NCBI GenBank assembly: GCA_040285825.1
Contig: JAUPSS010000003.1
Span: 1,736,001-1,800,000 of the forward strand
DNA length: 64,000 bases
Reading direction: 5' to 3'
From: Eukaryota sp. TZLM1-RC
Lineage: Eukaryota > Protista > Metamonada: BaSk clade
Under the pieces are notes generated by a model, which ran no database searches, was not told the origin of the DNA, and saw nothing but the letters and a program-made list of their open reading frames with translations. This document shows positions 6,348 through 25,975 of this stretch, piece by piece. A program made the translations under genes and the position numbers. Numbering within the stretch: position 1 is the stretch's first letter; each line of letters begins with the position of its first letter.

Positions 6348-9221
6348 CTAAATATATAAACTGGCACTGAAAGCAATATCTCTTTTTATAGATTTTATCG
6401 CAGCCACAAACTTGAGCTCAAGTTCATCATTGCAAATATTCTTGGCAACAACACTTAACTGACGTAGAAGCTCATCCAACCGCTTAATAACTTTGATGAT
6501 TTGGCCTTCAAATTCCTCAGTTTGATCCATAATATCCTTAAAACTTGCCCCCTCGCTCCAATCCATAACAATTTTCATCATTGAAGGTTTGAATTTGGCG
6601 ACATAGTCATCTACAGAGATATCTAGTCGAGCTTGCTGAGCAGCTTCTCCAACAGTCTTGGCCCGTGATAGTAAATCTTCATAAACTGACTTAATGGAGG
6701 CTGGAATTGCATATTCTTTGTTTTTCTTTTCCTTACGTTCATCAATGGCAAAGCAAGACAAAAGACCATTGATCTGAGTTGGAGTTAGTGGTAAAAAGGT
6801 ACCATCCAAGATTAGTTCAGCCAACATCAGCTCATCGCCTGTGCTTATTTCAGCAGCAACTCTTCCTTTGGTGGTGACACCATTGTCGTCTACAAAGCCA
6901 AGTGTTCGTAATACACGTTTCATTCCAGTCAATTCTGATTGGAGCAAGACTTTCTGAGAAGTCCGTATCTCATTTTGGATTTTCTCTTTATTTTCTTTCA
7001 ATTTTTGCGACTTAACGTATTTTTCAAATGATGGTAAAATATTGTCCTGTTTGTAATAAACATGATCACGTAACATTTCATCAACATCAACTAATTGGAG
7101 ATAAGCATCATCAAGTTCATCTGATTTGATTTTCATATCTTTAAGAGGATCAAGGAGTGGTAAATCGCCTCTAAAATGACTAACTATATGTTCTAAATTC
7201 CCCATTAATTGCTTTTTCCCCTCTAAAGAGTCCAATTTGGTAGCACTAACTTGTAATCGTAGTCTAGAAATCGCGCTTATACAGTCCAAATCAAACGTCA
7301 CTACTTCAGGTTTCTTTTCAAGAGGTTTAGCATTAGACTTACATGGTAATTGATTGTAATTATCAGTAGCATCTGTATTAACGAGGCATCGAACTTGGTG
7401 AATTACAGTTTCCCCAATCTGACTCCTTGTTGTTTCAATGACAACTCCCCAACCATATTCTAAAGTTGAATCATCTTGTTCTGAATTGCTCCAAGACACA
7501 TTATGAGGTCGTTTTAGTTTAACAGGTCGTAGAGGATTCAGAAAGGGGATAATATTGGTGGGTTCGACTATAATAGAAAGTATTTTAGCTTCAAGCTCTT
7601 CTTTTACAGAGTTTAAAGTATATAGACTCTCGAATTCTTCTAAATCTACATCATAACGTTCCAAATCTTGGTAAATATCCTTAATTTCTTGTTCTAATTC
7701 CTCAACTTTAGCTTCTAGTTCAGGAATTTGTCGACTTTTTTGAAAAGATAGATAACTCTTGTCTATCAAATCCTCTGCAGTGATTTCCTCTACTCTCATT
7801 GTGTTCAAAATCATATTATAACTTAAATGAAACTTTGAATCTAAAGTATTACTCCTCCCCATCATCATTTCCTTCATCTCAGGCGGCTCAACTCTATCAT
7901 TAAGCATGACAATAACTAAACCTTCCGTATCTTTACCCCTTCTTCCCGCTCTTCCACTCATTTGAATATACTCCCCACTATTGAGTTTTCGTTCAGATAC
8001 ACCATCAAACTTTGTGATATCTGTAAATACGACAGTTTTTGCAGGCATGTTGAGCCCCATAGAAAAAGTTTCAGTCGCAAAAAGCACCTTAACCAAGCCT
8101 TCTTGGAATAAAATCTCCGTTACTTCTTTTAGTATTGGAAATAATCCTGAATGATGAATCCCAATTCCTTGTTTAAGTAAAGGAAGTGATGATTTGATAG
8201 CAGGGATTTGCTTATCGTCCTCAGAAAGACCTTCAATTGCCGCATTAAAGATGAAATCAACTTGAAACTTTTCATCACTAGTGGTAAGATCAAATTTCTG
8301 AATCGAAAGGGCATTAGTTTCACACTCTTTGCGTGCGAATGAGAAAATAATGACTGGGAAGTAATTAAATTCTTTTAAATGCTTAATTAAAGTATTAAGT
8401 TCTAAATCCAACCTTCCCTTTTTCTTCCTCCCACCCCTCCTCAACTCCATTTGGCTCGTATTACTAGCCTTTTCGCTAATTAAACCAATGGCCTGTGCAA
8501 ACTTATCATCATTAAACTTGCCAGATTTATCGATAACATTGACAAACTTCGAGCTTCCTTGGGGGAAAACATAATGCAAAAGTGGAGTAGGTCTGAAATC
8601 CGTGTGAACGACAGTAACTGGTTGTTTATGGACACTTTCCACCCACCCAGCAAATTCCTTGGCATTGGGGACGGTAGCTGAAAGGAAAACAAAACGTACA
8701 GTGGATGGTAGCAATATCAGTGTTTCTTCCCAGACCACACCCCTTTCAGGATCCATTAGGTAATGAACCTCATCAAAAACAACCCATGCTACCTCTTTAA
8801 CGACTTCTGATCCCCTGTAGAGCATGGAACGAAGGATTTCAGTGGTCATCACGAGGCATTGTGCGTTGGGAGAGATGGTGACGTCACCAGTCATTAGGCC
8901 AACGTCTTTGAATTCGGATTGGAAGTCACGGTACTTCTGGTTAGAAAGAGCTTTGATAGGGGAGGTGTAGACAACACGTTGGGAGTTGCGAATGGACTGG
9001 GCAATAGCGTATTCAGCGACAACGGTTTTACCAGCGGAGGTATGAGCAGAAACCAGCACAGATTGTTGATTTTCAATGCAAGTGACAGCTTCACGTTGGA
9101 AAGAGTCGAGTTCAAAGGGATAGACTTTTGCAGGAGTTTTTTCAGGAGAAGGGCGCTTAGAAGGTTCAACAGGAAGATCTGCCTCACTGTGAAGTCGCTT
9201 AGATACAGTGACTTCCGCCAT
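6348..9221 (-). CDS. MTR4: Exosome RNA helicase MTR4 (Ski2-like DExH)
   Basis: SAHTSAGKT, YTSPIKALSNQK, DEVH, QMSGRAGRRG, arch/KOW insertion, C-terminal KRDIAFSASLY. Confidence 0.97.
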   Translation of the reverse strand: MAEVTVSKRLHSEADLPVEPSKRPSPEKTPAKVYPFELDSFQREAVTCIENQQSVLVSAHTSAGKTVVAEYAIAQSIRNSQRVVYTSPIKALSNQKYRDFQSEFKDVGLMTGDVTISPNAQCLVMTTEILRSMLYRGSEVVKEVAWVVFDEVHYLMDPERGVVWEETLILLPSTVRFVFLSATVPNAKEFAGWVESVHKQPVTVVHTDFRPTPLLHYVFPQGSSKFVNVIDKSGKFNDDKFAQAIGLISEKASNTSQMELRRGGRKKKGRLDLELNTLIKHLKEFNYFPVIIFSFARKECETNALSIQKFDLTTSDEKFQVDFIFNAAIEGLSEDDKQIPAIKSSLPLLKQGIGIHHSGLFPILKEVTEILFQEGLVKVLFATETFSMGLNMPAKTVVFTDITKFDGVSERKLNSGEYIQMSGRAGRRGKDTEGLVIVMLNDRVEPPEMKEMMMGRSNTLDSKFHLSYNMILNTMRVEEITAEDLIDKSYLSFQKSRQIPELEAKVEELEQEIKDIYQDLERYDVDLEEFESLYTLNSVKEELEAKILSIIVEPTNIIPFLNPLRPVKLKRPHNVSWSNSEQDDSTLEYGWGVVIETTRSQIGETVIHQVRCLVNTDATDNYNQLPCKSNAKPLEKKPEVVTFDLDCISAISRLRLQVSATKLDSLEGKKQLMGNLEHIVSHFRGDLPLLDPLKDMKIKSDELDDAYLQLVDVDEMLRDHVYYKQDNILPSFEKYVKSQKLKENKEKIQNEIRTSQKVLLQSELTGMKRVLRTLGFVDDNGVTTKGRVAAEISTGDELMLAELILDGTFLPLTPTQINGLLSCFAIDERKEKKNKEYAIPASIKSVYEDLLSRAKTVGEAAQQARLDISVDDYVAKFKPSMMKIVMDWSEGASFKDIMDQTEEFEGQIIKVIKRLDELLRQLSVVAKNICNDELELKFVAAIKSIKRDIAFSASLYI

Positions 9222-11488: not shown

Positions 11489-14400
11489 ATGGACTTCGAG
11501 CCATATCTCTCGTGGTTCCGAAACAAAGTTTCTTTCGCATTAGGTCTCAATCCTCTGGTGTTTGATTCATTTATTCAAGATGATAACAACTACCAGCTTC
11601 TCTGTGACTTTCTTCTATTTAACCATTCTTCTACATCAAATGCAAGCATTCTTTTGTTTTACACTGAACCTATCCCTGAGGAAGAGATAGCTTCACATTC
11701 TCCATTACCAGAGAGCACTCTTGACTCTCCATCTCATGATCAACCACTAATAGAGGAAAATAACACACATTCACCTCATCAAGACAATCCTGAATCACCC
11801 GAGACAACATCACAAGACAATCCTCCCAATGAAACTGAACCTGTTGAGACTTCAGAAGTAGAAGAAGAATCTAAGGAAGTCCAACCAAATTCTAACGCAT
11901 CTCCTTCAAACTCACCTTCTCCTCTAGCTCCTGCCCCCTCTAAGTTGGAAATACCCCCTCCACAACCCCCAAAAGACCGTCTTGAATCACTCTTATCAAG
12001 TAATTATCGGTTGATAGCATGTGGAGATACAGAAACCATTGCCAATTTTGATGATCTTCAAGTCTTTTACCTTCTCAAAAAGTATTCCCTCCAAGATTCT
12101 ATCTCCATGGTAAGAGAGTCTGAAGCATTGGAAGATGACGAAGATCCTCCAATCAACCTGGTTTTATCTCTATGTCTTGATTTTGGACTTATACTGGGCC
12201 ACCCTCTTTCTTCACTTGAACGTACTGCCAGAGATATATTTTTACCAATAACAGAATCAGGAGCACTCACTTCACTCTCCACCATGCCCTCCTCACCTTA
12301 CTCTACCTCTACTTCCCCCATACATCCACAAACTCCAGATTCAGCAACGAGAGACTCACATGGTTTAACCATGAAGGAGAGAAGTGAGTTTTCTGGTACG
12401 TTGAAGAGGTTTAGTAAGTCTGTAATGCATTCGGCAGTACAGATCAGTGGAGATTCTAAGCTGGAAATACCAAATATTAAGCTTCCCGAGAATAAGGAAG
12501 ACTTGATCCCTTTTCTTGATGATTCTGAGCTAATCAATCAATTATCCACGTCAGCACAAGAGTGGACACGTGTCATCTCGTCAGTTATTTATGAAGCAGA
12601 GTCACTAACCACTAATTCTGATACCCCAATGTCGGAAGTTGAGCTTTGGCGGGACAGAACTTCTCTATTAGCTGCAGTATTTCAGCAATTATCAACTCCC
12701 AAAGTAAAATCCATTTGCCTAATTCTCGAAATGGCAGAAGTGCCGTGTTATTCTCTTTTTAAGCATCAATTTAATATTCTTTCAAGCCATTATTTAGAAG
12801 CAAAAGACAATGCAAAGTTTTTAGGAACCCTGGATCGTTATTTTAAACTATTATCCTACGGATCTTTGCCTACGATCACTGACTCCATCCCTTCTCTTAT
12901 GAATGCCCTCAGAATGGTTTGGATCATTTCCAGACATTATAACACAGATGAAAGAATGAGGCCTTTATTACATAAAATAGCTTTATATATATGCGAAAGA
13001 GTTGGGAGCACTTTGAAACTAAAAACAAGATTGGCAAAACATAACCTATTACCATTAGTGGAAAAACTGAATCAAGCCAAGGCATTGCTTGATAAGTGGA
13101 AGTCTACCTATCTAGAAGTTCGACTTAAAATCGAAGAATCAGCTCGTGATTCACGCTGGGAATTCGACCAAAGACTTTTATTCGGACAAACTTCTTTCAT
13201 GTCTGATCGATGTTCGGAATTGTTAAAAATTGTCAACTCGGTCATTTATTTCAGAAGTCTTTTAGGTAACAAGCTTAAGTCAGTTACCGGCACGTCTTCA
13301 ACTATTGATGATGTTAAATCTGAAGTTGATGGACTTCTTGCACCTTTTGTTTCCGCATCGTTTGATATTTTTGACCCTAATAACCACTCTCTTTGGACTA
13401 CAATGGTTCTGCATTTTGAATCATCAGTTAAATCGATTCAGACAAGAGTTCGTGCACTTTTTGATGATGTCTTTTCCTCAATTACCTCAACCGAAGCTGC
13501 TCTGGCTTTATTCAAGGAATTCTCTGAACTTCACACGTCATCGAGTGTGTCGCTTGGCCAAGAAGTCGTTATGGCTGAGCCTGATCTACTCTTGAGTTCA
13601 TCTAGTCATGGTGACTCACGGTCAGATCTCAATACACAACTACAACGTAAGCTAGAGGCCATACTGCTGCAGTACGGCGCTCTGGTAGACTCTATTCAGC
13701 GTGAATTCGAACTTCGCATACAAGATCCACCCATTCCTAAGCATTTGACTCCTGTTACTGGTACTATTATTTTCTGCAGGACCCTTTTCCACCGTCTAAA
13801 ACGACCTTTTGTACAGTTCCAGAAGGTGGTGGACATGGACTCTATTGGCACCGGGAAGCATATCAACCAGCAGTATTTTTCCACGGCAAAGCAAATTAGA
13901 GATTATGAATTATCAATATTTAATAAGTGGAATTCAATGGTGGAAAGTGATGCGATTTCTTTACTACGAGCCAAGTTATTTACTGAGCATAAGGAGGAAT
14001 TCAAGGGTGTAAAAGTTACCAAATTTTCAGTCAATTTTTCGCCAGCTCTACACGAGCTCATCAACGAAGCTCTATCACTTGACCGAATTGGCTTTACCAT
14101 TGGCGATGTTGCTTTAAATATAGCTTTACAGTCTGAAATGTATTTTTCCCATGTGGGAGTGCTCAAAGACTTAATCAATTCATACGACTCACTTTTGGAA
14201 ACATTGTCGCCAATAGAACTTCAACTCTTATCCCAACCACTCAATCAATTATTATCAGTAATGTCTAGAGGTAGCAAGGTTTTGAATTGGACTTCTCTAT
14301 CAATACCCGAATTCTTGGATTCTTGCCATGCCTCTATCACTGATTTTAATTCCTTGATAACTAGAATGAGAAGATCACACTCTGAAATTGAAACTGCGGT

Positions 14401-17400
14401 CAATTATATTTCAACTGTAGAACTTGTACCTCCTCTAAATGTACTGTTAGATAAGGCTAATTTGGATTTAGAATCTGGTACTTTGCCTGATGTTCGGGAA
14501 TTTACAGATTTGATTGAATTAAATGTCTCCAATTTATTAAAAACTGCCTTGGAAAAGTACAATGATCTTAGGCCTCGATTTGAGAAAATTGAAGAACTCT
14601 TATTTGGGCAAAAAACAGGTTCATGTGAGCAAATGGTTGGTTATTACTCTTATTGGGAATCACGAATACTCTCTGCGCTGTCTACCTCCACTCTCACTGC
14701 TCTCCAGCACTTCTATTCGCTTCTAGTCGACTCAAAACAAGGTCCTTTGTTCAAACTGACTGCTTCACTAGTGGCATTGGATATTGTTTTAGATCCTTCT
14801 TGGAACGACGTTCATAAATCCACACTCAAGATTTACCACACTATTCTTAACTTTGGATTTAATTTCGTCAAATGGTATCCCAAAACTTGTATAATCAATA
14901 CTGAAAGTAGTATTAATTTCAAGGAAGATTTACTTTCCGATCCTTCCATTTCCCAACTCCAAACTGATATTCCTTTGGCCACACAGCAAGTCTGGGCTAG
15001 TGTAAATGAGTCAATTAACCCTTGGCAGTCATATTCCTTCTTGTGGAAGGTTTCTAGGGAAGAAATGATGGAGAAGTACATACAAGACACTGTTGAAATC
15101 AATAATGTAACCAAAACTCTTGAATTTTTCCAAGATGTTGTTGATTCACTCTGCTGTGCAACGGAATTCTTAGATGTGTTGTTTATTAGAATTGATTTCT
15201 CAAAGCTGATCAATGACATCAATTCTTTGTGTACACATTGGATCTCTGTATTGTGCTCCACCTTTGAACAGCAATGTGATCAGCTTTTGGAAAAACTTAC
15301 TTCAGAAATTGCTCAGTTCCAGCATGATATGACAAAGGTTCCAGAGAATATTGATGATTTAAAGTTTGTTCTGTCTGTAATATCGACCCTCAATGATAGA
15401 ACCATGGATGTAGAATTTGAACATTTGAATTGCGAGTCTGTCTATCATTTGCTTGTTCAATTTGGTCACAAATCGGAGACTTTATTAGATAATTACTCCA
15501 GAGCTCAGGCTCTTTCTTCTGATTGGCAATCATTACAAGAAACATCACGTGAACGGTTGACTTTTCTTGAAACGACAAAAGCGGAATTTACAGAGGTTAC
15601 CAAGAAGGACGTTGTCAAGTTCAAGGAGCGGGTTTCTGAATTTTTGGCTGATATTGAAGCAAACGGACCTGGAAAAGAAGGTATTGATTTAGACGAAGGT
15701 TTTGAAATTTTGAAAAAGAGCTCAGAGAAGCTTGAAAATTTTGCATTAGACAGAGATCGATTTATTAATGCAGAAAAATTATTTGATTTGCCCATCTCAA
15801 CTTATCCAGAATTAATCAAAATTTCCAAAATTTTGAATGATTTAAAAACAATTTATGATTTTTACCAAACTGTAAAAAATCAAATTGAAGAATGGTCAAA
15901 TATTTACTGGAGCGAGCTCAATCTACAACTATTAGAAGATCAGTTGGAAGATTTGTCCAGAAAACATCGGAAAATGAAAGATTTGAAGAGTTACCCACCT
16001 TATAATTCTGTTGCAACAATTATTAATAATTTTAAAGAATCAATTCCTCTAATGCAAGATTTAAAATCAGACGCTTTGAGACCTCGTCATTGGGAAAGTC
16101 TTATGGAAGCTACAGGCCAGCATTTTGATGTAGATGGAAAGTCTTTCACTCTGAGTGCAATTTTCAAAATGGAATTACATAAATATGCTTCAAATATCTC
16201 TGAAATTGTTGCTTTTGCTTCAAGAGAACTTCAAATTGAATCAGCATTGACTGAAATTGATGCTCTTTGGCGGAAATTCCAATTTGAGTTGGCAGTTTAC
16301 GCGCCAAGAGAAGATAATTCAGAAAAAACATTCATTCTTCGTGGAATTGACGAAATCACTACCAATCTAGAAGAATCTCTCACCACCATTCAATCAATGC
16401 TTTCCTCTAAATTTGTTTCTTTCTTCTTGACGGAAGTCCAATCCTGGGAACGGAAACTCTCCCACGTTTCTGAAGTTTGTGCTATTTGGATACAAGTGCA
16501 GGTAAAGTGGATGTACCTTGAGGGAATCTTTTTAGGCACAGACGATATTAGAAACCAGTTACCTGAAGAAGCAGAAAAGTTTGAAGTTATCGATAAGACT
16601 TGGAAGAAGATTATGACAGAAACGGAAAGAGTCAAAAACGTTGTTCATTGCTGTCACGCTGAAAATAGACTCGATCTACTCGAGCAAGTGGGTCGTGAAC
16701 TTGAGTCTTGCCAGAAAAGTTTGTCTGATTATTTAGACGTCAAAAGGACGGCTTATCCAAGATTTTATTTTATTTCTGATGATGAATTACTATCAATACT
16801 AGGTACAGATGACTCCCACAATGTGCAAGAGCACTGTATAAAGCTTTTCGACAACACTTCCTGCCTTTTGTTTGGCGAGGGAGCAAAAAGGAACACTGTA
16901 CAAGGGATGAAGTCTTCAGAGGGAGAGGAGTTTAGGTTCTTAACCGAGGTAAAAGCAGAAGGTCCAGTAGAAGAATGGTTACTTAAAGTGGATGAAGAAA
17001 TGAAAGCTACTCTTCACAGACTCACTAAGGAAGCCGTCTTTTCTTATGCTTCTTCACCACGCCCAGACTGGGTCCTTAATAATATTGGTATGAATGTTCT
17101 TTCAGGATCGCAGATTTGGTGGACATGGGAGGTTGAGGATGTTTTTGATGAGGTGCAGAAAGGTAATAAACGAGCAATGAAGCTTTTGCTCAAGCATTTG
17201 GTTTTACAATTGAATGATTTAACAGAAAAAGTGCTCGGAAAATTGTCAAAAAATAATAGACTCAAGCTCAATACTCTAATCATCATCGACGTTCACGCAC
17301 GTGATGTTGTTGATCGATTCGTCCGTGATTCTATTCTCAACCGCCAGGAATTTGATTGGGAGTCGCAATTAAGATTTTATTGGGATAAATTTAAGGATGA

Positions 17401-18133
17401 TATAGTTATTCGCCAATGCACTGGCGCTTTCCAATATGGATACGAATTCATGGGAATCAACGGGAGGCTTGTCATTACCCCTTTGACTGATCGATGCTAC
17501 ATGACTCTAACCCAAGCTCTGTCAATGTATCTCGGGGGTTCACCAGCAGGGCCAGCTGGTACAGGCAAGACAGAAACTGTAAAAGATTTAGCCAAAGCAA
17601 TGGCTCTTTTATGTAACGTTTTTAATTGTGGTGAAGGTCTAGACTATAAAGCAATGGCAAGAATTTTTGCTGGTCTTTCAGAATGTAGTGCGTGGGGTTG
17701 CTTTGACGAATTCAACAGAATCAATGCATCTGTATTGTCAGTTGTTTCGGAACAAATTAGAACAATTCAGAGAGCTTTAATTAATGATTCTGATAGTTTC
17801 ATATTTTCTGGAAGAGAAATTAAATTGGGCAGAAATATAGGTATTTTTATTACAATGAATCCTGGATATGCCGGAAGAACAGAGTTGCCTGATAATTTGA
17901 AAGCTCTTTTCAGGCCAGTAACAATGGTGACCCCTGATTTAGAAATAATTGCAGAGGTTGAGTTGTTGTCCTATGGATTCAAAGATGCAAAAACATTGGC
18001 AAGAAAAATTGTTACCTTCTATCAGCGAGCCTCTCAGATATTGTCAAAACAGCATCATTATGATTGGGGACTTCGTGCTATGAAATCTGTTTTGCGTTAT
18101 GCAAGTGAACTCAAACAGCAGCAAAAGAAGTGA
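11489..18133 (+). CDS. DNAH10: Axonemal dynein heavy chain, DNAH10/inner-arm I1-alpha type; tail + linker + AAA1 only
   Basis: MVWIISRHYNTDERM, PRFYFISDDELL, RLVITPLTDRCY, GPAGTGKTETVKDL, CFDEFNRI, MNPGYAGRTELP, HYDWGLRA; stops at 2214 aa. Confidence 0.93.
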   Translation: MDFEPYLSWFRNKVSFALGLNPLVFDSFIQDDNNYQLLCDFLLFNHSSTSNASILLFYTEPIPEEEIASHSPLPESTLDSPSHDQPLIEENNTHSPHQDNPESPETTSQDNPPNETEPVETSEVEEESKEVQPNSNASPSNSPSPLAPAPSKLEIPPPQPPKDRLESLLSSNYRLIACGDTETIANFDDLQVFYLLKKYSLQDSISMVRESEALEDDEDPPINLVLSLCLDFGLILGHPLSSLERTARDIFLPITESGALTSLSTMPSSPYSTSTSPIHPQTPDSATRDSHGLTMKERSEFSGTLKRFSKSVMHSAVQISGDSKLEIPNIKLPENKEDLIPFLDDSELINQLSTSAQEWTRVISSVIYEAESLTTNSDTPMSEVELWRDRTSLLAAVFQQLSTPKVKSICLILEMAEVPCYSLFKHQFNILSSHYLEAKDNAKFLGTLDRYFKLLSYGSLPTITDSIPSLMNALRMVWIISRHYNTDERMRPLLHKIALYICERVGSTLKLKTRLAKHNLLPLVEKLNQAKALLDKWKSTYLEVRLKIEESARDSRWEFDQRLLFGQTSFMSDRCSELLKIVNSVIYFRSLLGNKLKSVTGTSSTIDDVKSEVDGLLAPFVSASFDIFDPNNHSLWTTMVLHFESSVKSIQTRVRALFDDVFSSITSTEAALALFKEFSELHTSSSVSLGQEVVMAEPDLLLSSSSHGDSRSDLNTQLQRKLEAILLQYGALVDSIQREFELRIQDPPIPKHLTPVTGTIIFCRTLFHRLKRPFVQFQKVVDMDSIGTGKHINQQYFSTAKQIRDYELSIFNKWNSMVESDAISLLRAKLFTEHKEEFKGVKVTKFSVNFSPALHELINEALSLDRIGFTIGDVALNIALQSEMYFSHVGVLKDLINSYDSLLETLSPIELQLLSQPLNQLLSVMSRGSKVLNWTSLSIPEFLDSCHASITDFNSLITRMRRSHSEIETAVNYISTVELVPPLNVLLDKANLDLESGTLPDVREFTDLIELNVSNLLKTALEKYNDLRPRFEKIEELLFGQKTGSCEQMVGYYSYWESRILSALSTSTLTALQHFYSLLVDSKQGPLFKLTASLVALDIVLDPSWNDVHKSTLKIYHTILNFGFNFVKWYPKTCIINTESSINFKEDLLSDPSISQLQTDIPLATQQVWASVNESINPWQSYSFLWKVSREEMMEKYIQDTVEINNVTKTLEFFQDVVDSLCCATEFLDVLFIRIDFSKLINDINSLCTHWISVLCSTFEQQCDQLLEKLTSEIAQFQHDMTKVPENIDDLKFVLSVISTLNDRTMDVEFEHLNCESVYHLLVQFGHKSETLLDNYSRAQALSSDWQSLQETSRERLTFLETTKAEFTEVTKKDVVKFKERVSEFLADIEANGPGKEGIDLDEGFEILKKSSEKLENFALDRDRFINAEKLFDLPISTYPELIKISKILNDLKTIYDFYQTVKNQIEEWSNIYWSELNLQLLEDQLEDLSRKHRKMKDLKSYPPYNSVATIINNFKESIPLMQDLKSDALRPRHWESLMEATGQHFDVDGKSFTLSAIFKMELHKYASNISEIVAFASRELQIESALTEIDALWRKFQFELAVYAPREDNSEKTFILRGIDEITTNLEESLTTIQSMLSSKFVSFFLTEVQSWERKLSHVSEVCAIWIQVQVKWMYLEGIFLGTDDIRNQLPEEAEKFEVIDKTWKKIMTETERVKNVVHCCHAENRLDLLEQVGRELESCQKSLSDYLDVKRTAYPRFYFISDDELLSILGTDDSHNVQEHCIKLFDNTSCLLFGEGAKRNTVQGMKSSEGEEFRFLTEVKAEGPVEEWLLKVDEEMKATLHRLTKEAVFSYASSPRPDWVLNNIGMNVLSGSQIWWTWEVEDVFDEVQKGNKRAMKLLLKHLVLQLNDLTEKVLGKLSKNNRLKLNTLIIIDVHARDVVDRFVRDSILNRQEFDWESQLRFYWDKFKDDIVIRQCTGAFQYGYEFMGINGRLVITPLTDRCYMTLTQALSMYLGGSPAGPAGTGKTETVKDLAKAMALLCNVFNCGEGLDYKAMARIFAGLSECSAWGCFDEFNRINASVLSVVSEQIRTIQRALINDSDSFIFSGREIKLGRNIGIFITMNPGYAGRTELPDNLKALFRPVTMVTPDLEIIAEVELLSYGFKDAKTLARKIVTFYQRASQILSKQHHYDWGLRAMKSVLRYASELKQQQKK

Positions 18134-18341
18134 TTCAATATGTATAATAAAATTATTTAATTTTTGTTTGTTAAATGGGATTCTTTTTTGTAATTTGAGA
18201 AATTTCTAAATCATCAGGGAAAAGCATTTTTTATGAAAATCCATATAAAATAAAATCGGAATAAAAGATGCAAAAATAGAAAAAATAAACATAAATGTCT
18301 TTTTTTCTGTAATAATTTCTATTTACAACAGTGAATTGTTT

Positions 18342-21300
18342 TCACAAACTAAAAATATCCCTAGCACTAACAATGTCCTCGTTAGCAAAACTAACACCAC
18401 TAGGACGAACTCTTTTCATTACTGAATCTCTGGACTTTGTATCTCCAAATATAAGAAAAATACTATCCAACCTGCCACCACCTCCAGCAATTACTGAGCC
18501 GCAGGTTGAGACAAAAATTTCCAATCCAATAGCTTCATGGGCAGAAGATCGTTCAAAAACACTGATAATTGACCTTCTATCAATAATCCTTCGTTGAGTA
18601 AGCCTAAATAATATATCAGGAGTATTACTTTCAGTACAAATGCAAGAAAGGTCCAAAGCTTCCAATGGATTCATAAAAGTCGGTGGCAAAGTTCCCAGTT
18701 TCCGTGCAATTTCTTGTCCAGCAGAAAGAATATTTTGGGATGGAATTGATTTGAGCAAACCATTATTAATACAGCTTTGGACAATTAAGTGCATCGAGAG
18801 GTTAGTCACTATTAATACACTTGGGGAGGAATCAAGGGTATTTGACACGAGCCCAACATGATGAATTGATTCGATGGTTTCCTCAGAACTACAAATTAAA
18901 CTTTCTAAAGTGGAGATACTGCTGATAACCGAGCCAAATGACAATGGCGAATAGGGAAGAGGTGTTGAATTATTGGAGAAAAATGCCTGAATTTTGTATA
19001 CAGTTGAGAGAGCTTCTGATTTTGAAACAGGAAAACTTCTAGAATCACAAACTAAATCTTGGTACTTTTCATCTTGTGAATCCACCTGATCAGGATTAAC
19101 TTTTAAAGGTGGAAATTTTGATAGTATTGTGTAGTCAATGCTTAAATTGCTCCGTACCATACTTGAATTCAAATGTCGCGATTGTCGAACACCCAGATTG
19201 TTGAGAGTCTTGTAATTTCTGATTGACCATACAAAACGCCACGTGGCACTTGACTCGAATTGAGAGCGCACAGCACTGTGTGCAAGTCGTTTAACAAGTG
19301 ATCTGTTCTCCAAAATTTCAGAATTGTGACGTCTTAGGTAGTTGAATAACGTTGATTCATAAACTGATTCTGATTTACGGAAAGACTTCATCATCTGCCT
19401 GTAAACAGAAAGACAATTGTCAGTGATTGTGTCAAAAACTCTTGTGCAATCAGCTAGAATTCCTTGTTTGATAGCTAGTGCGGGTTCTAGCAACAAGCTT
19501 CGAAGTTCAAATGATTCACTTAAAACAAAAGATTTGAATTCCAAATCAGTTTCCCTTGACAAAAGCTCAAACCCATTGAAGTAGTCTTGAGACGATATAG
19601 CACTGGATAGGCCGCTACACTTTGAAGCATACGTCTTGACCAAAGATGGAAAGAATCTGTTCAAAACATGCCAAATTTTCACAGTCCACGAAAGAGAAAA
19701 AGGACTCTTAATTTCATCATTTGGTTCTATGGAAAGTAAACTTGGAACTGAATAGGATAGCAAAAACTTTGCGATTATCTTCATAAGCTTATCATCTCTG
19801 TTGAATGTAATTAAATGAAGATTATTATAAATCAACGGGCCGAGTAATTCCGGCACATTATCCCTTTTATGAGCAGAATTAATACCCACAGACCATTCCA
19901 AAAGCAACGGGAGTAAATGGAAAACATCATTAAAAGCGCCAGATTTTAAAACTTTAAAAATAATTGCAGGGGAAATCTTTGAAATTAAATCTAATACCCA
20001 ATCGAGAACAGTAAAAGCCAAGTGACTGGCTTCATTTTGAGTATCATCCTGAGCAGATTTTTCGTCTATTAATTTGACAATTCCAAGCAGCCTACTGCAA
20101 ATAATAGAGATCACCGAGTTCAAAGCGCCAAATATTGGGGGCTCAAAGGATTGAAGAGTTCGCAAATATGGAATCAAAAGCTGGCTTAGATGCCGGCAAA
20201 AAGTCTTGTACACCGTAACAACTGAACTAAACCTCACAAAGTCTTTTTCCTGTGGAATAACTTGAGAAATTGCACCAACCAGACGAGATTTATCACCATC
20301 TAGAACTAGTAGAACGACCATAGAAGCCGTTAACTTGAGCAACGAACCAGATAACGAAATGTGCTGAGATAGTGGAAAAGGTGACAAGGCGTGCTCTGAA
20401 TCTTCGTCATCAGAATTGCAAGGACTTTCAGCAGGAAATCTCAAGACTTCTTCATCAATGTTATCCTCTGAGAATTGATTAAAACCAAAGGAATCTGGTG
20501 TCAGCGAGAGGGTGAGATCATTTTCATTTTCACCAGCATCAAAATCGAATTCTTCCATTAGAAATTTTTCGAGTGTCTCAAACTCAAAATCATGATCCAC
20601 AGTTGATCCATCAAGTGTCAAGAGGAGATCACCCAAATATTTGGCAGAATTTTCGATTCTTTTTGGGAGTGATCCTAGCTGTTGATTTGATGTAGAAACC
20701 TTAGAAAGACATTGTCGAATGAAAAGAATATACAAATCGACGCAGACTTCAGCAATCTGGCGGTCAAAAGGGGAAGACTTTGCAAGACCTTCAAGCAAAG
20801 TCAATGAAAGCTGAACACATCTACCCATGGATGACGTGATTGGAAACGTCACTGTTTTGACGTGATGACTCAGCAGTTCCTTAAACGAATCAAGCATAAC
20901 ATCAGAGTCTGGATCTAATGCCCAAATCAATTTGAGCGAATTAAACCCAAAAGAATTCGCAGTGGAAAATAAAATTAATTTTGAAGCAAACTCTACTGGT
21001 ATAGTAGTAATAAAAGAGTAGATACAGTACCAAAGATTGACATCACGGGAAGCACGTAGCCAATCGTCACTTACACAAGAGAAATCTAAAGCAACACGAA
21101 TAAGAGAGGAAGCAACTGCATAGTTGCTAGAATTTTTATTTAAAAAGGGTAAAATGTGAGAGGGTTGGATGAACGACAAGAGTTTTTTGGATGCTCCTTT
21201 TTCTTTTCGTTGTATGGCTTGGCTACATAGTTTTTGGAGCACATAAATGATGAAAGAGCAATTGTGCACACTGCTGGTCGAATATTTTAAATTTTTCTTA

Positions 21301-24300
21301 TTTTCCCCATTATTTAGAGAACTCAGACTAGGAATTGATACGCAACAATTAAGTAGAGCGACCGTATCACGAATTCTTTCTCCAATCAAATCATCACGTG
21401 ACGAATTGAGAAGTAAATCAAACAGATTACGAATACTGTCAATCTCAGAATAAAGAGTTTTAGACACAATAGATAAAATTGTAGAAAAAGACTTGTGGAG
21501 TTTGGCATAAGAGAAAGCTAGTCTTTTGAAGAAAATGGTAATCAAAGTGGGATTGATAGCAGCAAACAGATGGGTACATTCGAGAAAGCAATCAAATAAT
21601 GATTGATCAAAAACGTCATCATCTTCTAGTCCAATAAGTGACATTAGTTTAACCAAATGACTATCTGAAAAAAACTTGGAAGAATTACCAGAATTAAACA
21701 TTGAGGAAAGGATTACTGATATGTTTGAGCAATGAAACCCATTTACTGGCTTGTGTGACAACGCATGTCGAAATGATTTACAAGAATTTGCTAATAAACA
21801 AAGTGAATCAATAGTAGAATCAAATAAATCTGAGGAAGAACAATTACTAAAAAGATATCCAAAGAACTCAATTCCATCTAAATAAAACAATGAAGATAGT
21901 GATGTTGAAAATTTGAGACAATGTGTTGTATTATCATTAGTGATCTCATTTACTACAAAAGAAGGATGTGGTAAGTGAGTTTCAGTGGAGGAAACGTGAG
22001 AAAATTGATTGATTGAAGAACAACCACCCACAGTGGAAGGTAGGACACCAAAACCTTCAGAAAAATGTTTAATAAAATGAGCACCGGGGGACTCGAACCC
22101 GGAACCGCCAAACTTTGATAGCTTATTAAACTCTAAAGGTGACAAAACTTGGTTATAAATTCTTGGTTCAGCAACACAAATTCGATCTGATACAGTCAAA
22201 TGAAAAGATTGAGTAGAAGTGAAAACTTTAAATAAATGTTTTGAAACATTTGAAGGAATTGATGAACTCAATAACGTAGTAGTTTGGTCAAAATAAACAC
22301 TAACTTTCCAGGAGAATCGTTGTTTAAAAATACTGAAGCAAAAAAGTTTCCAATTAAGTTCAGAATCCACACATACAGTGTCTGAACTTACAGTGAATGG
22401 ATAGCGGCTACCAGAGGCATCTTGAAATATTAAAACAAGTCGTGACTTATTTATTTCCAATGAAATTGTGGTTCCTAATATTGATAAAAGTTCTAAATTC
22501 GAGGTTGAAAGGTCCAAAAACCGCAGAAAACAAGAGAAACTGAGCCCATTAGAACCAAAATCAATCTTTTTTGATTGGGAAGGTGACGTGGAACTGGACA
22601 AAAAAGGATTAAAAAAATCACCATTAGATTCCTCGAATTGGTACTTGCCAGTTTCCAACACGAAATAAGGTGTCGAAAAAGACATCAAGTTCAGAAAATG
22701 AAGTAAATTACTAGAAATATTACAATTCGCATCCAAGAGTTTCTCAGTAATCAAACACAAATCTAAAGGAGTGCAAGCAACCGAGAAGATACGACTAATA
22801 AGAGTTTCTAGACAACAAATCAACACGTCAGCTTCAGAGATTTCAAGGGAATTCTCATACAAGCTCAAAAGTAAATTGATCGCGTGATAGCAAACGTGGC
22901 AGTCTGCGAAAAGTCTGGCAGTTGAAGGGCGGAGAGATAATGATGTAGCGGTGTCGATAAAATCTTCATATAACAAAAGATTGGAATCAGAATTGATAGA
23001 GTTGAAAATGACATTTAAAATGGAAGCAAATAAGCAACCATTGTTTAAAGTTAAGTTTAGATGAATTTCTTCTTCTAATTTTGGTGAGGATGAGCAAATT
23101 TTTAATACTTGCAGCAGACAAGTCCTAGAGGACTCAATACTACCAAAAAAGTCATAATAAAGCTCACTCCACTTGTCAAGATTGAGCTCTTCTTGTAAGG
23201 CGAATTCTATAAAATTTAAATGTTTGACTGAATCACTAAAGCTTGAGAACTTGTGAAACAAAGAAGCCAAAGCTATAGAAACCATTTCCCTCAAATGAGG
23301 TTTACTGAAGAACAAAATCAGCAATCTTTCAACTACCTTTGCACACCCCAAAGCTCTGATTAAGCACACGGAGCTCTCTTCTGCAGAAAATATCGACTGT
23401 GTTAAGATAGCCAAGATAGAGGAAGTTGCCTTGACTTTGGTTGACTTTGAAGACTCGCAAAGACTGATGACGTGGTCCAAAAAACCAGTAGGAACAAAAG
23501 AATCATCTATAAACTCCCTATCTAAAGAGCTCAGAGTAAATAACAAAGCCTTCAAGACTATCACACTACTATTCTGCACAAGTAAGTTACTATGAGCCAC
23601 AAGATCAATAAAACAAAAAGAAGAATTAATCATGATGTACCTCAATACTGAAGAAGAAACTGCAACTGTTGACAAAAAACGACAAACTATTTGGTATGCG
23701 TGAATGAGGTTTTCATCGATTGCAATAGATTCGTCTGCAAGATTTTGAAACCTTTTGGCAAAGGATTGGGAAATAAGAACTGAGTTTGTGAGAAAACCAC
23801 ATTCACCAAGGCTACAAGCTAGCTGACGAGCTGAATTTTTCGAAAACGAGCGCACACAGTCATTAATAGTGGAATAGAGCTCAACTATCAAATCCAAAAT
23901 ATTCACACTGTCCAAATTTTCAACCTTTTCCCTAACCACAACTAAAACAGAAGCCAACGAAGCCAAGACACTTAACCCTGCTACCCCCACATCTTCCTCC
24001 TTGACTCTCCCTTCAATGTCTACCACACCACCGCTACACCTACAAACTGACGACAGCAAAGACATAATTGAACTTCGTGGAGAAGAAGGAAGGTCCTGAG
24101 TTAAGGAGAGAAAAAGCTCATCAATGGATCGTGAACAACTAAATGATGCAATGAAGAGGTTATGAGGGTGGTCGTCAAGAACGGACTGAACCGTCTTGAT
24201 AATAAGGCTTGCGAAAATTTCACGAGTTTCGATAGAGATCAAACAATCAGAATATAGTTGACTTAAAATTTCAATAGTTTCAGGATTCATTAGCGTACCT

Positions 24301-25406
24301 TTAGACTCAGTAGTGGTCGTGTTGATCAAAGCCATTGACCCCAGACACATGAGTAAGGAAGTGAAAAAACTAGATGAAGTTTTGATGGCTAGACGATCAG
24401 TAGAAGCAATAGTTGTCAAATATTTCAAAAAATCACGTGATGTTGGCAAAACGGAAGCTGATTGGTTAAACAGTTCAAAACCTCGCTGAACCATTATTGG
24501 AAACAAATCAAAACCAGCATTCTCTTTAAATAGAGAAAATAAAGATGGAACGTGAACTAAACAACAAGTAAAGGAAGAAAATAAATTGGAAATACTTGAT
24601 TCTAAAGGGAAACTGGATAAGTAAAAGTTATCAAAAATTGATTTAAAAAACCAAATACTAATTCGAATAAAATCAGATTTTTCAAAATTTAATTCATCAA
24701 AATTTAAACACAACATAGATTTAGAAAAGGATAAATAAACTACCTTGAAAATTATACACGGCACATACAGAAATGACTCTGAAAAGGAAACTCTACTACA
24801 AAAACTTTCAAAAATAGTAAACAATGATTTAAAAGGCGAAAGTTTTATCAATTCCAGATTTTTTGATGGCAAAAGTTTGTCCAAGTCAATAAAACTACAC
24901 GAGTAACAACTAAAATCTGTTAAATTTCTGAATGTTTCTAAAGGAAAAAGTCCTGCACATCGAACGACAATGCAGCTAGTCACCTCAGAAATGGTTGAAT
25001 CACTAGAGTCGGCAGCCAGGGCGCATCTGTGTGCACAAATAGCAGGAATACCGGAAGAACAGAGAGCTTTGTGGTTGAGAGAGGTACGTAGAAGACCCAG
25101 AACAGCAGTATAACAGTCTAATGAATTGTAAGAGAATGACTTGAGATTTGAGGAGAGAAAATGGGTAAGTTCAGAGCACAGCAGTTCAAAAAGTGTAGAA
25201 ACGACGTCTGGTGAAGATATAGTAGGTGAAAAGTGTGAAGATAAGGAAGCTGTACGTTCAAACTTACACAAGTCAGAGATTATGAGAGACAAGCTCGTAG
25301 AGGAAGGTGCTGGTGAAGGAGCTGCATTAGAACGTCTTCCCTTGAAGAACATTAGAATTAGTTCAAAGAATTCTTTATAAAAATCTGCATTGTAGCGGTC
25401 TGTCAT
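18342..25406 (-). CDS. BEACH-family-like protein (helical repeats, ConA/LamG-like domain, PH-BEACH-type PH) lacking BEACH and WD40 domains
   Basis: 2354-aa ORF; beta-rich segment near aa 950-1100 (GLSFSCFL..WKLFCFSI); C-terminal ISVFERS..IGLEIF..SIFLIF..RDSVMKRV resembles the PH domain that precedes BEACH. Confidence 0.65.
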   Translation of the reverse strand: MTDRYNADFYKEFFELILMFFKGRRSNAAPSPAPSSTSLSLIISDLCKFERTASLSSHFSPTISSPDVVSTLFELLCSELTHFLSSNLKSFSYNSLDCYTAVLGLLRTSLNHKALCSSGIPAICAHRCALAADSSDSTISEVTSCIVVRCAGLFPLETFRNLTDFSCYSCSFIDLDKLLPSKNLELIKLSPFKSLFTIFESFCSRVSFSESFLYVPCIIFKVVYLSFSKSMLCLNFDELNFEKSDFIRISIWFFKSIFDNFYLSSFPLESSISNLFSSFTCCLVHVPSLFSLFKENAGFDLFPIMVQRGFELFNQSASVLPTSRDFLKYLTTIASTDRLAIKTSSSFFTSLLMCLGSMALINTTTTESKGTLMNPETIEILSQLYSDCLISIETREIFASLIIKTVQSVLDDHPHNLFIASFSCSRSIDELFLSLTQDLPSSPRSSIMSLLSSVCRCSGGVVDIEGRVKEEDVGVAGLSVLASLASVLVVVREKVENLDSVNILDLIVELYSTINDCVRSFSKNSARQLACSLGECGFLTNSVLISQSFAKRFQNLADESIAIDENLIHAYQIVCRFLSTVAVSSSVLRYIMINSSFCFIDLVAHSNLLVQNSSVIVLKALLFTLSSLDREFIDDSFVPTGFLDHVISLCESSKSTKVKATSSILAILTQSIFSAEESSVCLIRALGCAKVVERLLILFFSKPHLREMVSIALASLFHKFSSFSDSVKHLNFIEFALQEELNLDKWSELYYDFFGSIESSRTCLLQVLKICSSSPKLEEEIHLNLTLNNGCLFASILNVIFNSINSDSNLLLYEDFIDTATSLSLRPSTARLFADCHVCYHAINLLLSLYENSLEISEADVLICCLETLISRIFSVACTPLDLCLITEKLLDANCNISSNLLHFLNLMSFSTPYFVLETGKYQFEESNGDFFNPFLSSSTSPSQSKKIDFGSNGLSFSCFLRFLDLSTSNLELLSILGTTISLEINKSRLVLIFQDASGSRYPFTVSSDTVCVDSELNWKLFCFSIFKQRFSWKVSVYFDQTTTLLSSSIPSNVSKHLFKVFTSTQSFHLTVSDRICVAEPRIYNQVLSPLEFNKLSKFGGSGFESPGAHFIKHFSEGFGVLPSTVGGCSSINQFSHVSSTETHLPHPSFVVNEITNDNTTHCLKFSTSLSSLFYLDGIEFFGYLFSNCSSSDLFDSTIDSLCLLANSCKSFRHALSHKPVNGFHCSNISVILSSMFNSGNSSKFFSDSHLVKLMSLIGLEDDDVFDQSLFDCFLECTHLFAAINPTLITIFFKRLAFSYAKLHKSFSTILSIVSKTLYSEIDSIRNLFDLLLNSSRDDLIGERIRDTVALLNCCVSIPSLSSLNNGENKKNLKYSTSSVHNCSFIIYVLQKLCSQAIQRKEKGASKKLLSFIQPSHILPFLNKNSSNYAVASSLIRVALDFSCVSDDWLRASRDVNLWYCIYSFITTIPVEFASKLILFSTANSFGFNSLKLIWALDPDSDVMLDSFKELLSHHVKTVTFPITSSMGRCVQLSLTLLEGLAKSSPFDRQIAEVCVDLYILFIRQCLSKVSTSNQQLGSLPKRIENSAKYLGDLLLTLDGSTVDHDFEFETLEKFLMEEFDFDAGENENDLTLSLTPDSFGFNQFSEDNIDEEVLRFPAESPCNSDDEDSEHALSPFPLSQHISLSGSLLKLTASMVVLLVLDGDKSRLVGAISQVIPQEKDFVRFSSVVTVYKTFCRHLSQLLIPYLRTLQSFEPPIFGALNSVISIICSRLLGIVKLIDEKSAQDDTQNEASHLAFTVLDWVLDLISKISPAIIFKVLKSGAFNDVFHLLPLLLEWSVGINSAHKRDNVPELLGPLIYNNLHLITFNRDDKLMKIIAKFLLSYSVPSLLSIEPNDEIKSPFSLSWTVKIWHVLNRFFPSLVKTYASKCSGLSSAISSQDYFNGFELLSRETDLEFKSFVLSESFELRSLLLEPALAIKQGILADCTRVFDTITDNCLSVYRQMMKSFRKSESVYESTLFNYLRRHNSEILENRSLVKRLAHSAVRSQFESSATWRFVWSIRNYKTLNNLGVRQSRHLNSSMVRSNLSIDYTILSKFPPLKVNPDQVDSQDEKYQDLVCDSRSFPVSKSEALSTVYKIQAFFSNNSTPLPYSPLSFGSVISSISTLESLICSSEETIESIHHVGLVSNTLDSSPSVLIVTNLSMHLIVQSCINNGLLKSIPSQNILSAGQEIARKLGTLPPTFMNPLEALDLSCICTESNTPDILFRLTQRRIIDRRSIISVFERSSAHEAIGLEIFVSTCGSVIAGGGGRLDSIFLIFGDTKSRDSVMKRVRPSGVSFANEDIVSARDIFSL

Positions 25407-25934: not shown

Positions 25935-25975
25935 TGATGATGTTGATGCGTGTATTGAGGATATTGAGTTCTATT
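25935..25975 (+). mobile_element. Short 3'-end relic of non-LTR family B
   Basis: GATGCGTGTATTGAGGATATTGAG matches the DACLEDIE terminus at 61660-61689. Confidence 0.55.

What the first reader, a model, noticed from the sequence alone, without database searches (positions are those of the whole stretch)
11489..18133. Half a dynein: intact 2214-aa DNAH10-type ORF stops just after the AAA1 core
Seen: an uninterrupted ORF with conserved motifs ends at HYDWGLRAMKSVLRYASELKQQQKK*, followed by AT-rich UTR-like DNA with AATAAA. No downstream frame resembles dynein and no cis-intron rescues it. Known: dynein heavy chains are about 4000-4600 aa; AAA2-6, stalk and microtubule-binding domain are missing here. 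Giardia has fragmented, trans-spliced outer-arm dynein genes. Inference: an independent gene fission of an inner-arm dynein, made either as two polypeptides that assemble a motor ring or joined by trans-splicing (the stop sits in GAA|GTGATT, a poor match to the local GTWTG donor).
Basis: partly seen in the sequence, partly recalled or inferred. Interest (0 to 1): 0.82.

Follow-up and report, generated by a model that had tools for sequence, protein, structure and literature searches.

The report
Inner-arm dynein gene split in two
In the flagellate Skoliomonas litria, the giant inner-arm dynein motor gene (DNAH10 type) is broken into two intact, exactly complementary genes 49 kb apart on opposite strands. 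They are most likely made as two proteins that reassemble, which adds one more natural case of a split dynein.

Summary
Window 11489-18133 (+) is an intact 2214-aa ORF with the dynein tail, the linker and the first 231 of 327 positions of the AAA1 Pfam model. No other dynein-like sequence lies in the window.

The genome is Skoliomonas litria TZLM1-RC (GCA_040285825.1). I found the missing half: P9112_004806, 2506 aa, on the same contig and opposite strand. Its ATG lies 49 kb upstream of the N-half ATG, and it covers AAA1 positions 230-327 through the C-terminal domain.

Against the unsplit orthologue of Skoliomonas sp. GEM-RC1 the two halves abut to the codon, with nothing lost or duplicated. 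The fission is therefore specific to S. litria relative to GEM-RC1.

- The N-half adds five codons and a TGA, followed by an ordinary-looking 3' flank.
- The C-half has its own ATG and a 36-aa acidic, Ser/Thr-rich leader.
- This genome's strict intron signals (GTATG ... YTRAY-N3-AG) are absent at both break ends.
- The flanks show no complementarity above chance, and neither half evolves faster than the unsplit orthologue.

I favour two polypeptides (253 and 283 kDa) that reassemble. Trans-splicing, recent inactivation and an assembly or allelic artefact are less likely. No RNA data could be reached.

The scan had already flagged the C-half (s1-656417). It also followed up a split outer-arm dynein in the same genome (s1-656329).

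The parts
11489..18133 (+). N-terminal half-gene of the inner-arm I1/f alpha (DNAH10-type) dynein heavy chain: 2214 aa, about 253 kDa
   Evidence: ORF list, Pfam, collinear with the GEM-RC1 orthologue L001 7735-14221, called as one gene in GCA_040285825.1, mass
12533..14314 (+). Tail region, DHC_N1 (residues 349-942)
   Evidence: Pfam PF08385, E 3e-118, profile 1-562/562
15818..17035 (+). Linker, DHC_N2 (residues 1444-1849)
   Evidence: Pfam PF08393, E 3e-128, profile 3-403/403
17435..18127 (+). AAA1 large subdomain and most of the AAA1 lid (AAA_6 positions 1-231 of 327). Includes Walker A GPAGTGKT (residue 2021), Walker B FDEFN (2072) and the sensor-II helix HYDWGLRAMKS
   Evidence: Pfam PF12774, motif search, alignment A1
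18115..18116 (+). Break point. The last homologous codon (K of SELK) ends at 18115. The orthologue's next codon continues at L003:10109 in the other half-gene
   Evidence: BLASTP (P0001 1-1407 against the N-half, 1408-1708 against C-half residues 37-337). tblastx (L001 14221|14222, same frame). Pfam AAA_6 1-231 and 230-327
18116..18133 (+). New tail QQQKK plus the TGA stop, with no counterpart in other dyneins
   Evidence: Sequence, alignment A1
18134..18341 (.). 208-bp A/T-rich spacer shared with the convergent 2354-aa ORF. It is the probable 3' UTR and poly(A) region of the N-half, with TAATAAA 11 nt after the stop. It holds no GTATG donor, and none of its sequence recurs in the window or in the C-half locus (L003)

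Best explanation
A genomic rearrangement in the Skoliomonas litria lineage cut the single-copy-type inner-arm I1/f alpha dynein heavy-chain gene. The cut falls just after the sensor-II helix of the AAA1 lid, ahead of a short variable loop.

Two independent genes resulted. One is the N-half in this window: tail, linker, AAA1 large subdomain and most of the lid, 2214 aa. The other is the C-half, P9112_004806, at JAUPSS010000003.1 1690925-1698445 on the minus strand. It carries the rest of the AAA1 Pfam model, AAA2-AAA6, the stalk with the microtubule-binding domain and the C-terminal domain, 2506 aa. Its ATG lies 49,043 bp upstream of the N-half ATG, in divergent orientation.

Shown here: the two halves are exactly complementary, the sister species' gene is unsplit, both ORFs are intact with no rate acceleration, each has its own start and stop, and the local splice signals and flank pairing are absent.

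Inferred: each half is transcribed and translated on its own. The two chains, 253 and 283 kDa, then associate non-covalently. The likely contacts are the normally tight AAA1-lid/AAA2-large interface, the AAA6/AAA1 interface and linker docking. The main ATPase site would then be built from two polypeptides: Walker A/B, sensor I and sensor II on the N-half, and the arginine finger on the C-half. This is how the Ustilago, Schizophyllum and Wallemia split cytoplasmic dyneins are thought to work.
For: - Partner half: found on the same 3.72-Mb contig.
- Codon-exact abutment: shown against GEM-RC1 protein P0001 and locus L001. Pfam AAA_6 covers positions 1-231 in one half and 230-327 in the other.
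- Unsplit orthologue: the GEM-RC1 gene runs unbroken over L001 7729-21650.
- C-half is complete: all Pfam motor domains match end to end, up to Dynein_C 3-309/309.
- No decay: S. litria is as close to three outgroups as the unsplit GEM-RC1 gene is (N-half 61/58/58% against 62/60/58%). Lineage-unique changes at conserved sites number 45 in S. litria and 46 in GEM-RC1 over 1888 columns.
- Own stop: a TGA five codons after homology ends, followed by a 3' flank like those of 14 other genes.
- Own start: the first in-frame ATG, followed by a 36-aa leader. Its first 44 residues carry a net charge of -8.
- Local intron rule: four introns give GTATG...YTRAY-N3-AG. No GTATG occurs in window 17800-18700, and no YTRAY-N3-AG occurs between the last in-frame stop (L003 9790) and homology start (10109).
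- No flank pairing: the best helix between the flanks is at or below shuffled controls, and duplex energy is unremarkable.
- Break position: it falls at the end of a predicted helix, before a variable 8-residue loop.
- Precedents: split dyneins made as separate polypeptides are described in PMC5100056 and PMC4540427. The AAA1S/AAA2L rigid pairing and the tripartite AAA1 site are described in PMC4879348.
Against: - No RNA evidence: no RNA run was served for this organism.
- Assembly not checked by reads: the two DNA runs gave only low-depth 151-bp unitigs. None was shown to bridge 18000-18340.
- Full-length paralogue not excluded: a full-length DNAH10 paralogue or an intact allele elsewhere in S. 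litria could not be ruled out. The one search aimed at it was swamped by animal sequences.
- Age unknown: if the split is very recent, intact ORFs and normal rates would not prove continued function.
- Demanding position: cutting next to the main catalytic site is structurally demanding.
- Unexplained open frame: the C-half frame is open for 70 further codons upstream of its ATG. The whole 106-codon open run has a chance probability of about 1e-4, and the model does not explain it.
Confidence: 0.58

Rival explanations
1. Spliceosomal trans-splicing, as for the Giardia outer-arm dynein and Hsp90 genes. The two loci would be transcribed separately and the pre-mRNAs joined into one mRNA for a single ~4680-aa chain.
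For: Related metamonads (Giardia, Spironucleus) trans-splice split dynein genes (PMC5100056; papers listed). The break is codon-exact with nothing lost. The C-half frame stays open for 106 codons upstream of homology, which read-through of a joined mRNA might require. A weak GT lies at 18130 (AAGAA|GTGATT).
Against: All four introns recovered here follow GTATG...YTRAY-N3-AG. No such donor lies within 900 nt around the N-half end, and no such branch/acceptor lies in the open frame ahead of the C-half. No complementarity between the flanks exceeds shuffles, whereas Giardia split introns pair extensively. GEM-RC1 has no intron at this position. The N-half has an in-frame stop and a normal-looking 3' flank, and the C-half has its own ATG.
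Confidence: 0.12
2. A recent inactivating rearrangement. The gene was simply broken, so the halves are young pseudogenes, or only one of them keeps a reduced role, such as a motor-less scaffold in the I1 complex.
For: The split is absent from GEM-RC1, so it could be young. The region upstream of the C-half is a mosaic of repeats and transposon-like fragments, which suggests recent rearrangement. Expression is unproven.
Against: About 14 kb of coding sequence in a 35-39% GC genome carries no stop or frameshift in either half. S. litria shows no excess of lineage-specific changes at conserved sites. All catalytic motifs and Pfam domains are full length. An in-frame ATG with an open leader occurs by chance only about 5% of the time. 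Per an earlier follow-up note of this scan, which I did not test, another dynein in this genome is split with the cut conserved in three species (s1-656329).
Confidence: 0.17
3. An assembly artefact or structural heterozygosity. The true genome, or one haplotype, carries a contiguous gene, and the assembled contig shows a mis-joined or inverted arrangement.
For: I could not lay reads across the junctions. Only sparse 151-bp unitigs at depth 2-4 matched, and none was shown to bridge 18000-18340. A misjoin would also give a codon-exact break.
Against: Both junctions lie deep inside a 3.72-Mb contig from a Nanopore (41x) plus Illumina (206x) assembly (PMC11316075). Two wrong joins about 56 kb apart would be needed. 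A misjoin does not predict an in-frame ATG with an open 36-codon leader, nor a stop followed by a normal 3' flank. The genome's own RNA-seq-trained and manually curated annotation calls two genes with exactly these limits.
Confidence: 0.1

Closest known systems
Split cytoplasmic dynein heavy chains of Basidiomycota: Ustilago maydis Dyn1/Dyn2, Schizophyllum commune dhc1/dhc2, and Wallemia (split within AAA1)
   Same: One dynein heavy chain is encoded by two separate genes with complementary coverage. Each has its own start and stop, and they are thought to be translated separately and assembled (PMC5100056; PMC4540427). The Wallemia cut is also inside AAA1.
   Different: Those are cytoplasmic dynein-1 in fungi. 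This is an axonemal inner-arm I1/f alpha (DNAH10-type) chain in a free-living metamonad. The cut here is after the sensor-II helix of the AAA1 lid. The two genes lie 49 kb apart in divergent orientation. Separate translation is inferred here, not shown.
Trans-spliced split outer-arm dynein genes of Giardia (DHC beta and gamma) and the partial DHC genes of Spironucleus
   Same: These are fragmented axonemal dynein heavy-chain genes in metamonads, with pieces at distant loci (PMC5100056).
   Different: Giardia pieces carry canonical splice sites and complementary intron halves and are joined at the RNA level. Here the local donor, the branch/acceptor motif and flank pairing are all absent. The dynein class also differs: inner-arm I1 alpha rather than outer arm.
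Split outer-arm beta dynein of the same genome (scan finding s1-656329, with s1-644021)
   Same: The organism is the same and the reading is the same: two genes, separate polypeptides, a leader on the C-terminal piece. This rests on an earlier AI note that I did not test.
   Different: That cut is inside AAA2 and is said to be conserved in three species. The cut described here is at the AAA1 lid and is absent from GEM-RC1, so it is younger and independent.
Unsplit DNAH10 / Chlamydomonas DHC1 (1-alpha) type I1 dynein heavy chains
   Same: Identity is 50-57% over the linker and AAA1, and 75% to the GEM-RC1 orthologue in that region. The domain order is the same and all motifs are kept.
   Different: Those are single chains of about 4300-4700 aa. 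Here the same content is spread over chains of 2214 and 2506 aa.

Membership tests
Axonemal inner-arm I1/f alpha dynein heavy chain (DNAH10 / DHC1-alpha orthologues) | Dynein tail (DHC_N1), linker (DHC_N2) and a catalytic AAA1 with Walker A/B and sensor II | tested here: met
   Pfam, motifs, alignment
Axonemal inner-arm I1/f alpha dynein heavy chain (DNAH10 / DHC1-alpha orthologues) | Closest similarity to DNAH10 / 1-alpha rather than to other dynein classes | tested here: met
   Named top hits are DNAH10, 'Dynein-1-alpha heavy chain' and 'dynein-1 subspecies f' at 50-57% identity. No class-level phylogeny was built.
Axonemal inner-arm I1/f alpha dynein heavy chain (DNAH10 / DHC1-alpha orthologues) | Tail, six AAA+ modules, stalk and C-terminal domain on one polypeptide | tested here: not met
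   The content is complete but spread over two genes.
Split dynein genes translated as separate polypeptides (Ustilago Dyn1/Dyn2 type) | Two genes whose products together cover a full heavy chain without overlap | tested here: met
   Codon-exact abutment against GEM-RC1. AAA_6 1-231 plus 230-327.
Split dynein genes translated as separate polypeptides (Ustilago Dyn1/Dyn2 type) | Each piece has its own start codon, stop codon and flanking signals | tested here: met
   TGA with an ordinary 3' flank, and the first in-frame ATG with a leader. Promoter and poly(A) use are not shown.
Split dynein genes translated as separate polypeptides (Ustilago Dyn1/Dyn2 type) | Separate mRNAs with no bridging transcripts, and the two proteins in one complex | not testable with these tools
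   No RNA run was served. No proteomics is available.
Giardia-type spliceosomal trans-spliced split genes | Consensus 5' splice site at the end of the upstream piece | tested here: not met
   No GTATG or GTAYG in window 17800-18700. Only GTGATT overlaps the stop.
Giardia-type spliceosomal trans-spliced split genes | Branch-point/acceptor motif just ahead of the downstream piece | tested here: not met
   No YTRAY-N3-AG between L003 9790 and 10109.
Giardia-type spliceosomal trans-spliced split genes | Base-pairing between the two intron halves | tested here: not met
   The best helices are at or below shuffled controls within 320 and 730 nt of flank. Duplex energy is within controls.
Giardia-type spliceosomal trans-spliced split genes | Chimeric mature mRNA | not testable with these tools
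   No RNA data.
Split-intein protein trans-splicing | An N-intein of about 100 aa at the end of the first piece, and a C-intein ending in HN followed by Cys/Ser/Thr at the start of the second | tested here: not met
   The N-half extension is only QQQKK. The 36-aa leader is acidic and Ser/Thr/Pro-rich with no terminal His-Asn. The intein features are from my own knowledge.

The most novel reading that the evidence does not exclude
Skoliomonas litria may tolerate repeated, independent fission of its giant dynein heavy chains. At least the inner-arm I1 alpha is split, and the scan's notes add the outer-arm beta and a third chain cut at the AAA1/AAA2 boundary. The I1-alpha cut is young: it is absent from GEM-RC1, and it splits the main catalytic site between two polypeptides. 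If both halves work, S. litria and GEM-RC1 give a natural before-and-after pair. That pair would show that a dynein AAA+ ring can be closed non-covalently at the AAA1-lid/AAA2 junction. It would also hint at a lineage-specific aid to assembly, or at a non-canonical way of joining RNA.
Probability: 0.3. Interest if true: 0.65.

Novelty: new member of a known kind. Interest (0 to 1): 0.5.

Why it matters
Dynein heavy chains are among the largest single-chain motors, and very few natural cases show that the ring can be built from two chains. This cut lies beside the main ATPase site. Walker A/B, sensor I and sensor II would sit on one chain and the arginine finger on the other. A closely related species still has the uncut gene. 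If expression of both halves is confirmed, this gives a clean comparative system for studying how an AAA+ ring tolerates a break. It also shows where inner-arm I1 dynein can be cut for engineering. It adds to evidence that metamonad genomes fragment giant flagellar genes by more than one route. Annotators should pair these two 'hypothetical proteins' as one dynein.

Tried and rejected
- **Reads.** Only two low-share DNA runs were served. They gave 151-bp unitigs at depth 2-4 plus spurious 21-37-nt matches from large bacterial contigs. No RNA was available and no contig was shown to bridge the junction, so neither misassembly nor expression could be tested.
- **Third large protein search.** The query was P0060, region 685-1500. 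It was meant to reveal a full-length (>4000 aa) skoliomonad DNAH10, either an S. litria paralogue or the RCL orthologue. Animal and fungal DNAH10 filled the list, and even the positive control P0121 was missing, so it says nothing.
- **Synteny.** I first read the match L001 24151-24475 to window 59587-59911 as synteny downstream of the gene. That stretch is a frameshifted, repeated transposon-like region, so I withdrew the reading.
- **Single inversion breaking both convergent genes.** If one inversion had also cut the neighbouring 2354-aa ORF, its missing part should lie just upstream of the C-half ATG. The genes there are a 122-aa ORF and a PLD gene, so this is not supported.
- **Same split in Carpediemonas.** P0182 (2551 aa) starts at an internal Met about 50 residues before this break. 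That is a different position and probably a truncated gene model.
- **Split intein.** Rejected on the lengths and sequences of the two extensions.
- **Global RNA duplex energy.** Not informative. It was replaced by a best-helix test.
- **Joined protein.** Each half was handled separately by reference. The structure prediction used the naturally unsplit GEM-RC1 segment.


Full report
**Observation**

It runs from 11489 to 18133 on the plus strand, 2214 aa, from ATG to TGA. Pfam finds DHC_N1, DHC_N2 and positions 1-231 of the 327-position AAA_6 (AAA1) model, all at E-values below 1e-110. tblastn with five DNAH10-type proteins shows homology ending at 18115-18118 (…SELK). Nothing else in the 64-kb window resembles dynein. 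The convergent 2354-aa ORF that starts 208 bp downstream has no Pfam match, even at E = 5.

**Source**

The exact protein is called on contig JAUPSS010000003.1 (3.72 Mb) of GCA_040285825.1. Its partner protein on that same contig is labelled 'Eukaryota sp. TZLM1-RC'. TZLM1-RC is the type strain of Skoliomonas litria (PMC11603281). The genome is described in PMC11316075, which mentions neither dynein nor trans-splicing. The window is bases 1736001-1800000 of that contig.

**The other half**

The best relative of the ORF is P0001 of the sister species Skoliomonas sp. GEM-RC1. P0001 continues for 300 residues past the point where the S. litria ORF stops. I searched with those residues and found P0121 = P9112_004806 of TZLM1-RC. 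It is 2506 aa, 75% identical, and on the same contig.

P0121 lies at 1690925-1698445 on the minus strand (locus L003:10001-17521). Its ATG is 49,043 bp upstream of the N-half ATG, in divergent orientation. Pfam finds AAA_6 positions 230-327, then AAA_5, AAA_7, AAA_8, the stalk (MT), AAA_9, Dynein_heavy, AAA_lid_11 and Dynein_C, all essentially end to end.

**Exact complementarity and an unsplit relative**

- P0001 residues 1-1407 align to the N-half, and residues 1408-1708 align to residues 37-337 of the C-half.
- At the DNA level, GEM-RC1 L001 …14221 matches window …18115, and L001 14222… matches L003 10109…, in the same frame.
- Nothing is lost or duplicated.
- In GEM-RC1 the whole gene is contiguous (L001 7729-21650), although it is annotated as six fragmentary models.
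- GEM-RC1 has no intron at the break position.

The fission therefore arose in the S. litria lineage after it separated from GEM-RC1.

**What was added at the break**

The N-half gains QQQKK and a TGA. Its 3' flank is T/A-rich, with TAATAAA 11 nt after the stop. The same kind of motif follows the stop of several of the 14 other genes I compared, including the C-half.

The C-half begins at the first in-frame ATG with 36 extra residues. The first 44 residues carry a net charge of -8 and hold 16 Ser/Thr and 5 Pro.

Upstream of that ATG the DNA is a mosaic of repeats:

- a ~1.2-kb transposon-like stretch;
- a 111-nt element that elsewhere sits close upstream of gene starts;
- an 81-nt copy of a sequence found at window 25931-26010.

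This fits a rearranged, transposon-rich origin for the new 5' region. That origin is an inference.

**Trans-splicing test**

Four introns recovered from the window and the fetched loci share one strict design. The donor is GTATG, and the branch motif YTRAY sits exactly three bases before the AG. Lengths are 27-113 nt.

| Signal | Region searched | Result |
|---|---|---|
| GTATG or GTAYG donor | window 17800-18700 | none |
| YTRAY-N3-AG branch/acceptor | L003 9790 (last in-frame stop) to 10109 (homology start) | none |
| Complementary helix between the flanks | 320 nt and 730 nt of flank | 9-17 paired bases, at or below shuffles |
| Duplex energy between the flanks | same flanks | within controls |

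The Giardia-type mechanism is therefore not supported by sequence. A non-canonical version cannot be excluded without RNA data.

**Is the gene decaying?**

I aligned each S. litria half with the matching GEM-RC1 pieces and three outgroups. Identity to the outgroups is the same for both species: N-half 61/58/58% against 62/60/58%, with the C-half pieces equal or better. Changes unique to one lineage at otherwise conserved sites number 45 for S. litria and 46 for GEM-RC1. Both ORFs are uninterrupted over 14 kb in DNA of 35-39% GC. The catalytic motifs are present. Either selection continues on both halves or the split is very recent.

**Where the cut falls in the protein**

I predicted the structure of the naturally unsplit GEM-RC1 segment from a 22-sequence alignment (mean pLDDT 69). 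The break falls at the C-terminal end of the helix that carries HYDFGLR…LK, the sensor-II helix of the AAA1 lid. An 8-residue loop follows, and that loop is the only variable stretch nearby.

In dynein the AAA1 lid normally packs tightly on the AAA2 large subdomain. The AAA1 ATP site is a three-part interface of the AAA1 large subdomain, the AAA1 lid and the AAA2 large subdomain. Sensor II comes from the lid, and the arginine finger comes from AAA2 (PMC4879348). In S. litria this site would be shared between two chains.

**Mechanism and rivals**

I favour two separately made polypeptides of 253 and 283 kDa that reassemble (0.58). Rivals, with my estimates:

| Reading | Confidence |
|---|---|
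| Two polypeptides that reassemble | 0.58 |
| Recent inactivation, or only partial function retained | 0.17 |
| Trans-splicing | 0.12 |
| Misassembly or an intact second allele | 0.10 |

Fungal cytoplasmic dyneins provide a precedent for separate polypeptides. Ustilago is cut in AAA4, Agaricomycetes before the motor, and Wallemia inside AAA1. In those cases EST data cover the gene ends but never bridge them (PMC5100056; PMC4540427).

An earlier follow-up note of this scan reports that the outer-arm beta dynein of this same genome is also two genes (s1-656329). That note says the cut is conserved in three species. I did not test it.

**Limits**

- No RNA run was available.
- The DNA runs were too shallow to check the junctions.
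- The search for a full-length paralogue failed for technical reasons.

**Verdict**

This is a genuine, lineage-specific fission of the I1 alpha inner-arm dynein gene, with the partner half identified. It is a new member of a known but rare kind. Interest is moderate until expression is shown.

Noticed in passing
L003:9791-10108 (upstream part of the C-half gene; JAUPSS010000003.1 about 1698338-1698655, minus strand): The C-half reading frame is open for 106 codons before dynein homology begins. Of these, 36 follow the ATG and 70 precede it, and the 70 contain no ATG. The chance of this is about 1e-4 at local base composition. The 70-codon stretch matches nothing in the loci at hand, and no model explains it.
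   Followed up: partly
window 4759-4869; L003 9349-9459, 18395-18479, 22619-22711, 26449-26559: A ~111-nt element at 94-96% identity recurs upstream of gene starts. It ends 3 nt before the ATG of the SWSAP1-like ORF at 4873 and about 50-70 nt before the gene starts at L003 18551 and 22763. One copy lies 540 nt upstream of the C-half ATG. This may be the 'portable promoter cassette' of note s1-656370.
   Followed up: partly
window 18342-25406 (-): A convergent 2354-aa ORF ends 208 bp from the dynein stop and has no Pfam match even at E = 5. First readers called it BEACH-like and truncated. Its stop (…AGTTTGTGAAAA) does not lie in this genome's GTATG donor consensus. If one inversion had cut it too, its missing part should lie just upstream of the C-half ATG, but no gene model there fits.
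   Followed up: partly
window 27241-27272 (+), 28395-28507 (-); L003 intron in gene 1562-3439 (-); L001 intron in gene 7255-7673 (-): Skoliomonad introns are few and follow a rigid design: GTATG donor and YTRAY branch motif exactly three bases before the AG, with lengths of 27-113 nt. This resembles the fused branch/acceptor motifs of Giardia and Trichomonas.
   Followed up: yes
L001 7729-21650 (GEM-RC1, JAUFOQ010000003.1): The unsplit GEM-RC1 orthologue is annotated as six separate 'hypothetical proteins' (753, 1710, 225, 290, 841 and 707 aa) separated by gaps of 10-90 nt. This looks like frameshifts or annotation breaks rather than real fissions.
   Followed up: partly
window 59049-61689 (+); L003 8112-9348; L001 21938-24475: A frameshifted transposon-like repeat family is shared by S. 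litria and GEM-RC1. One copy lies just upstream of the C-half, and one lies just downstream of the GEM-RC1 dynein gene. It can be mistaken for synteny.
   Followed up: partly
P0182 (Carpediemonas membranifera, 2551 aa): This dynein model has no tail or linker. It starts at an internal Met in AAA1, about 50 residues before the S. litria break. It is either a truncated gene model or another, differently placed split in a fornicate.
   Followed up: no
P0002 (labelled UNVERIFIED_CONTAM, Acipenser sinensis, 3148 aa): This is the second-best HMMER hit to the N-half region, at 1260 bits against about 1000 for typical DNAH10. It is flagged as contamination in a sturgeon assembly and may come from a protist closer to skoliomonads than animals are.
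   Followed up: no
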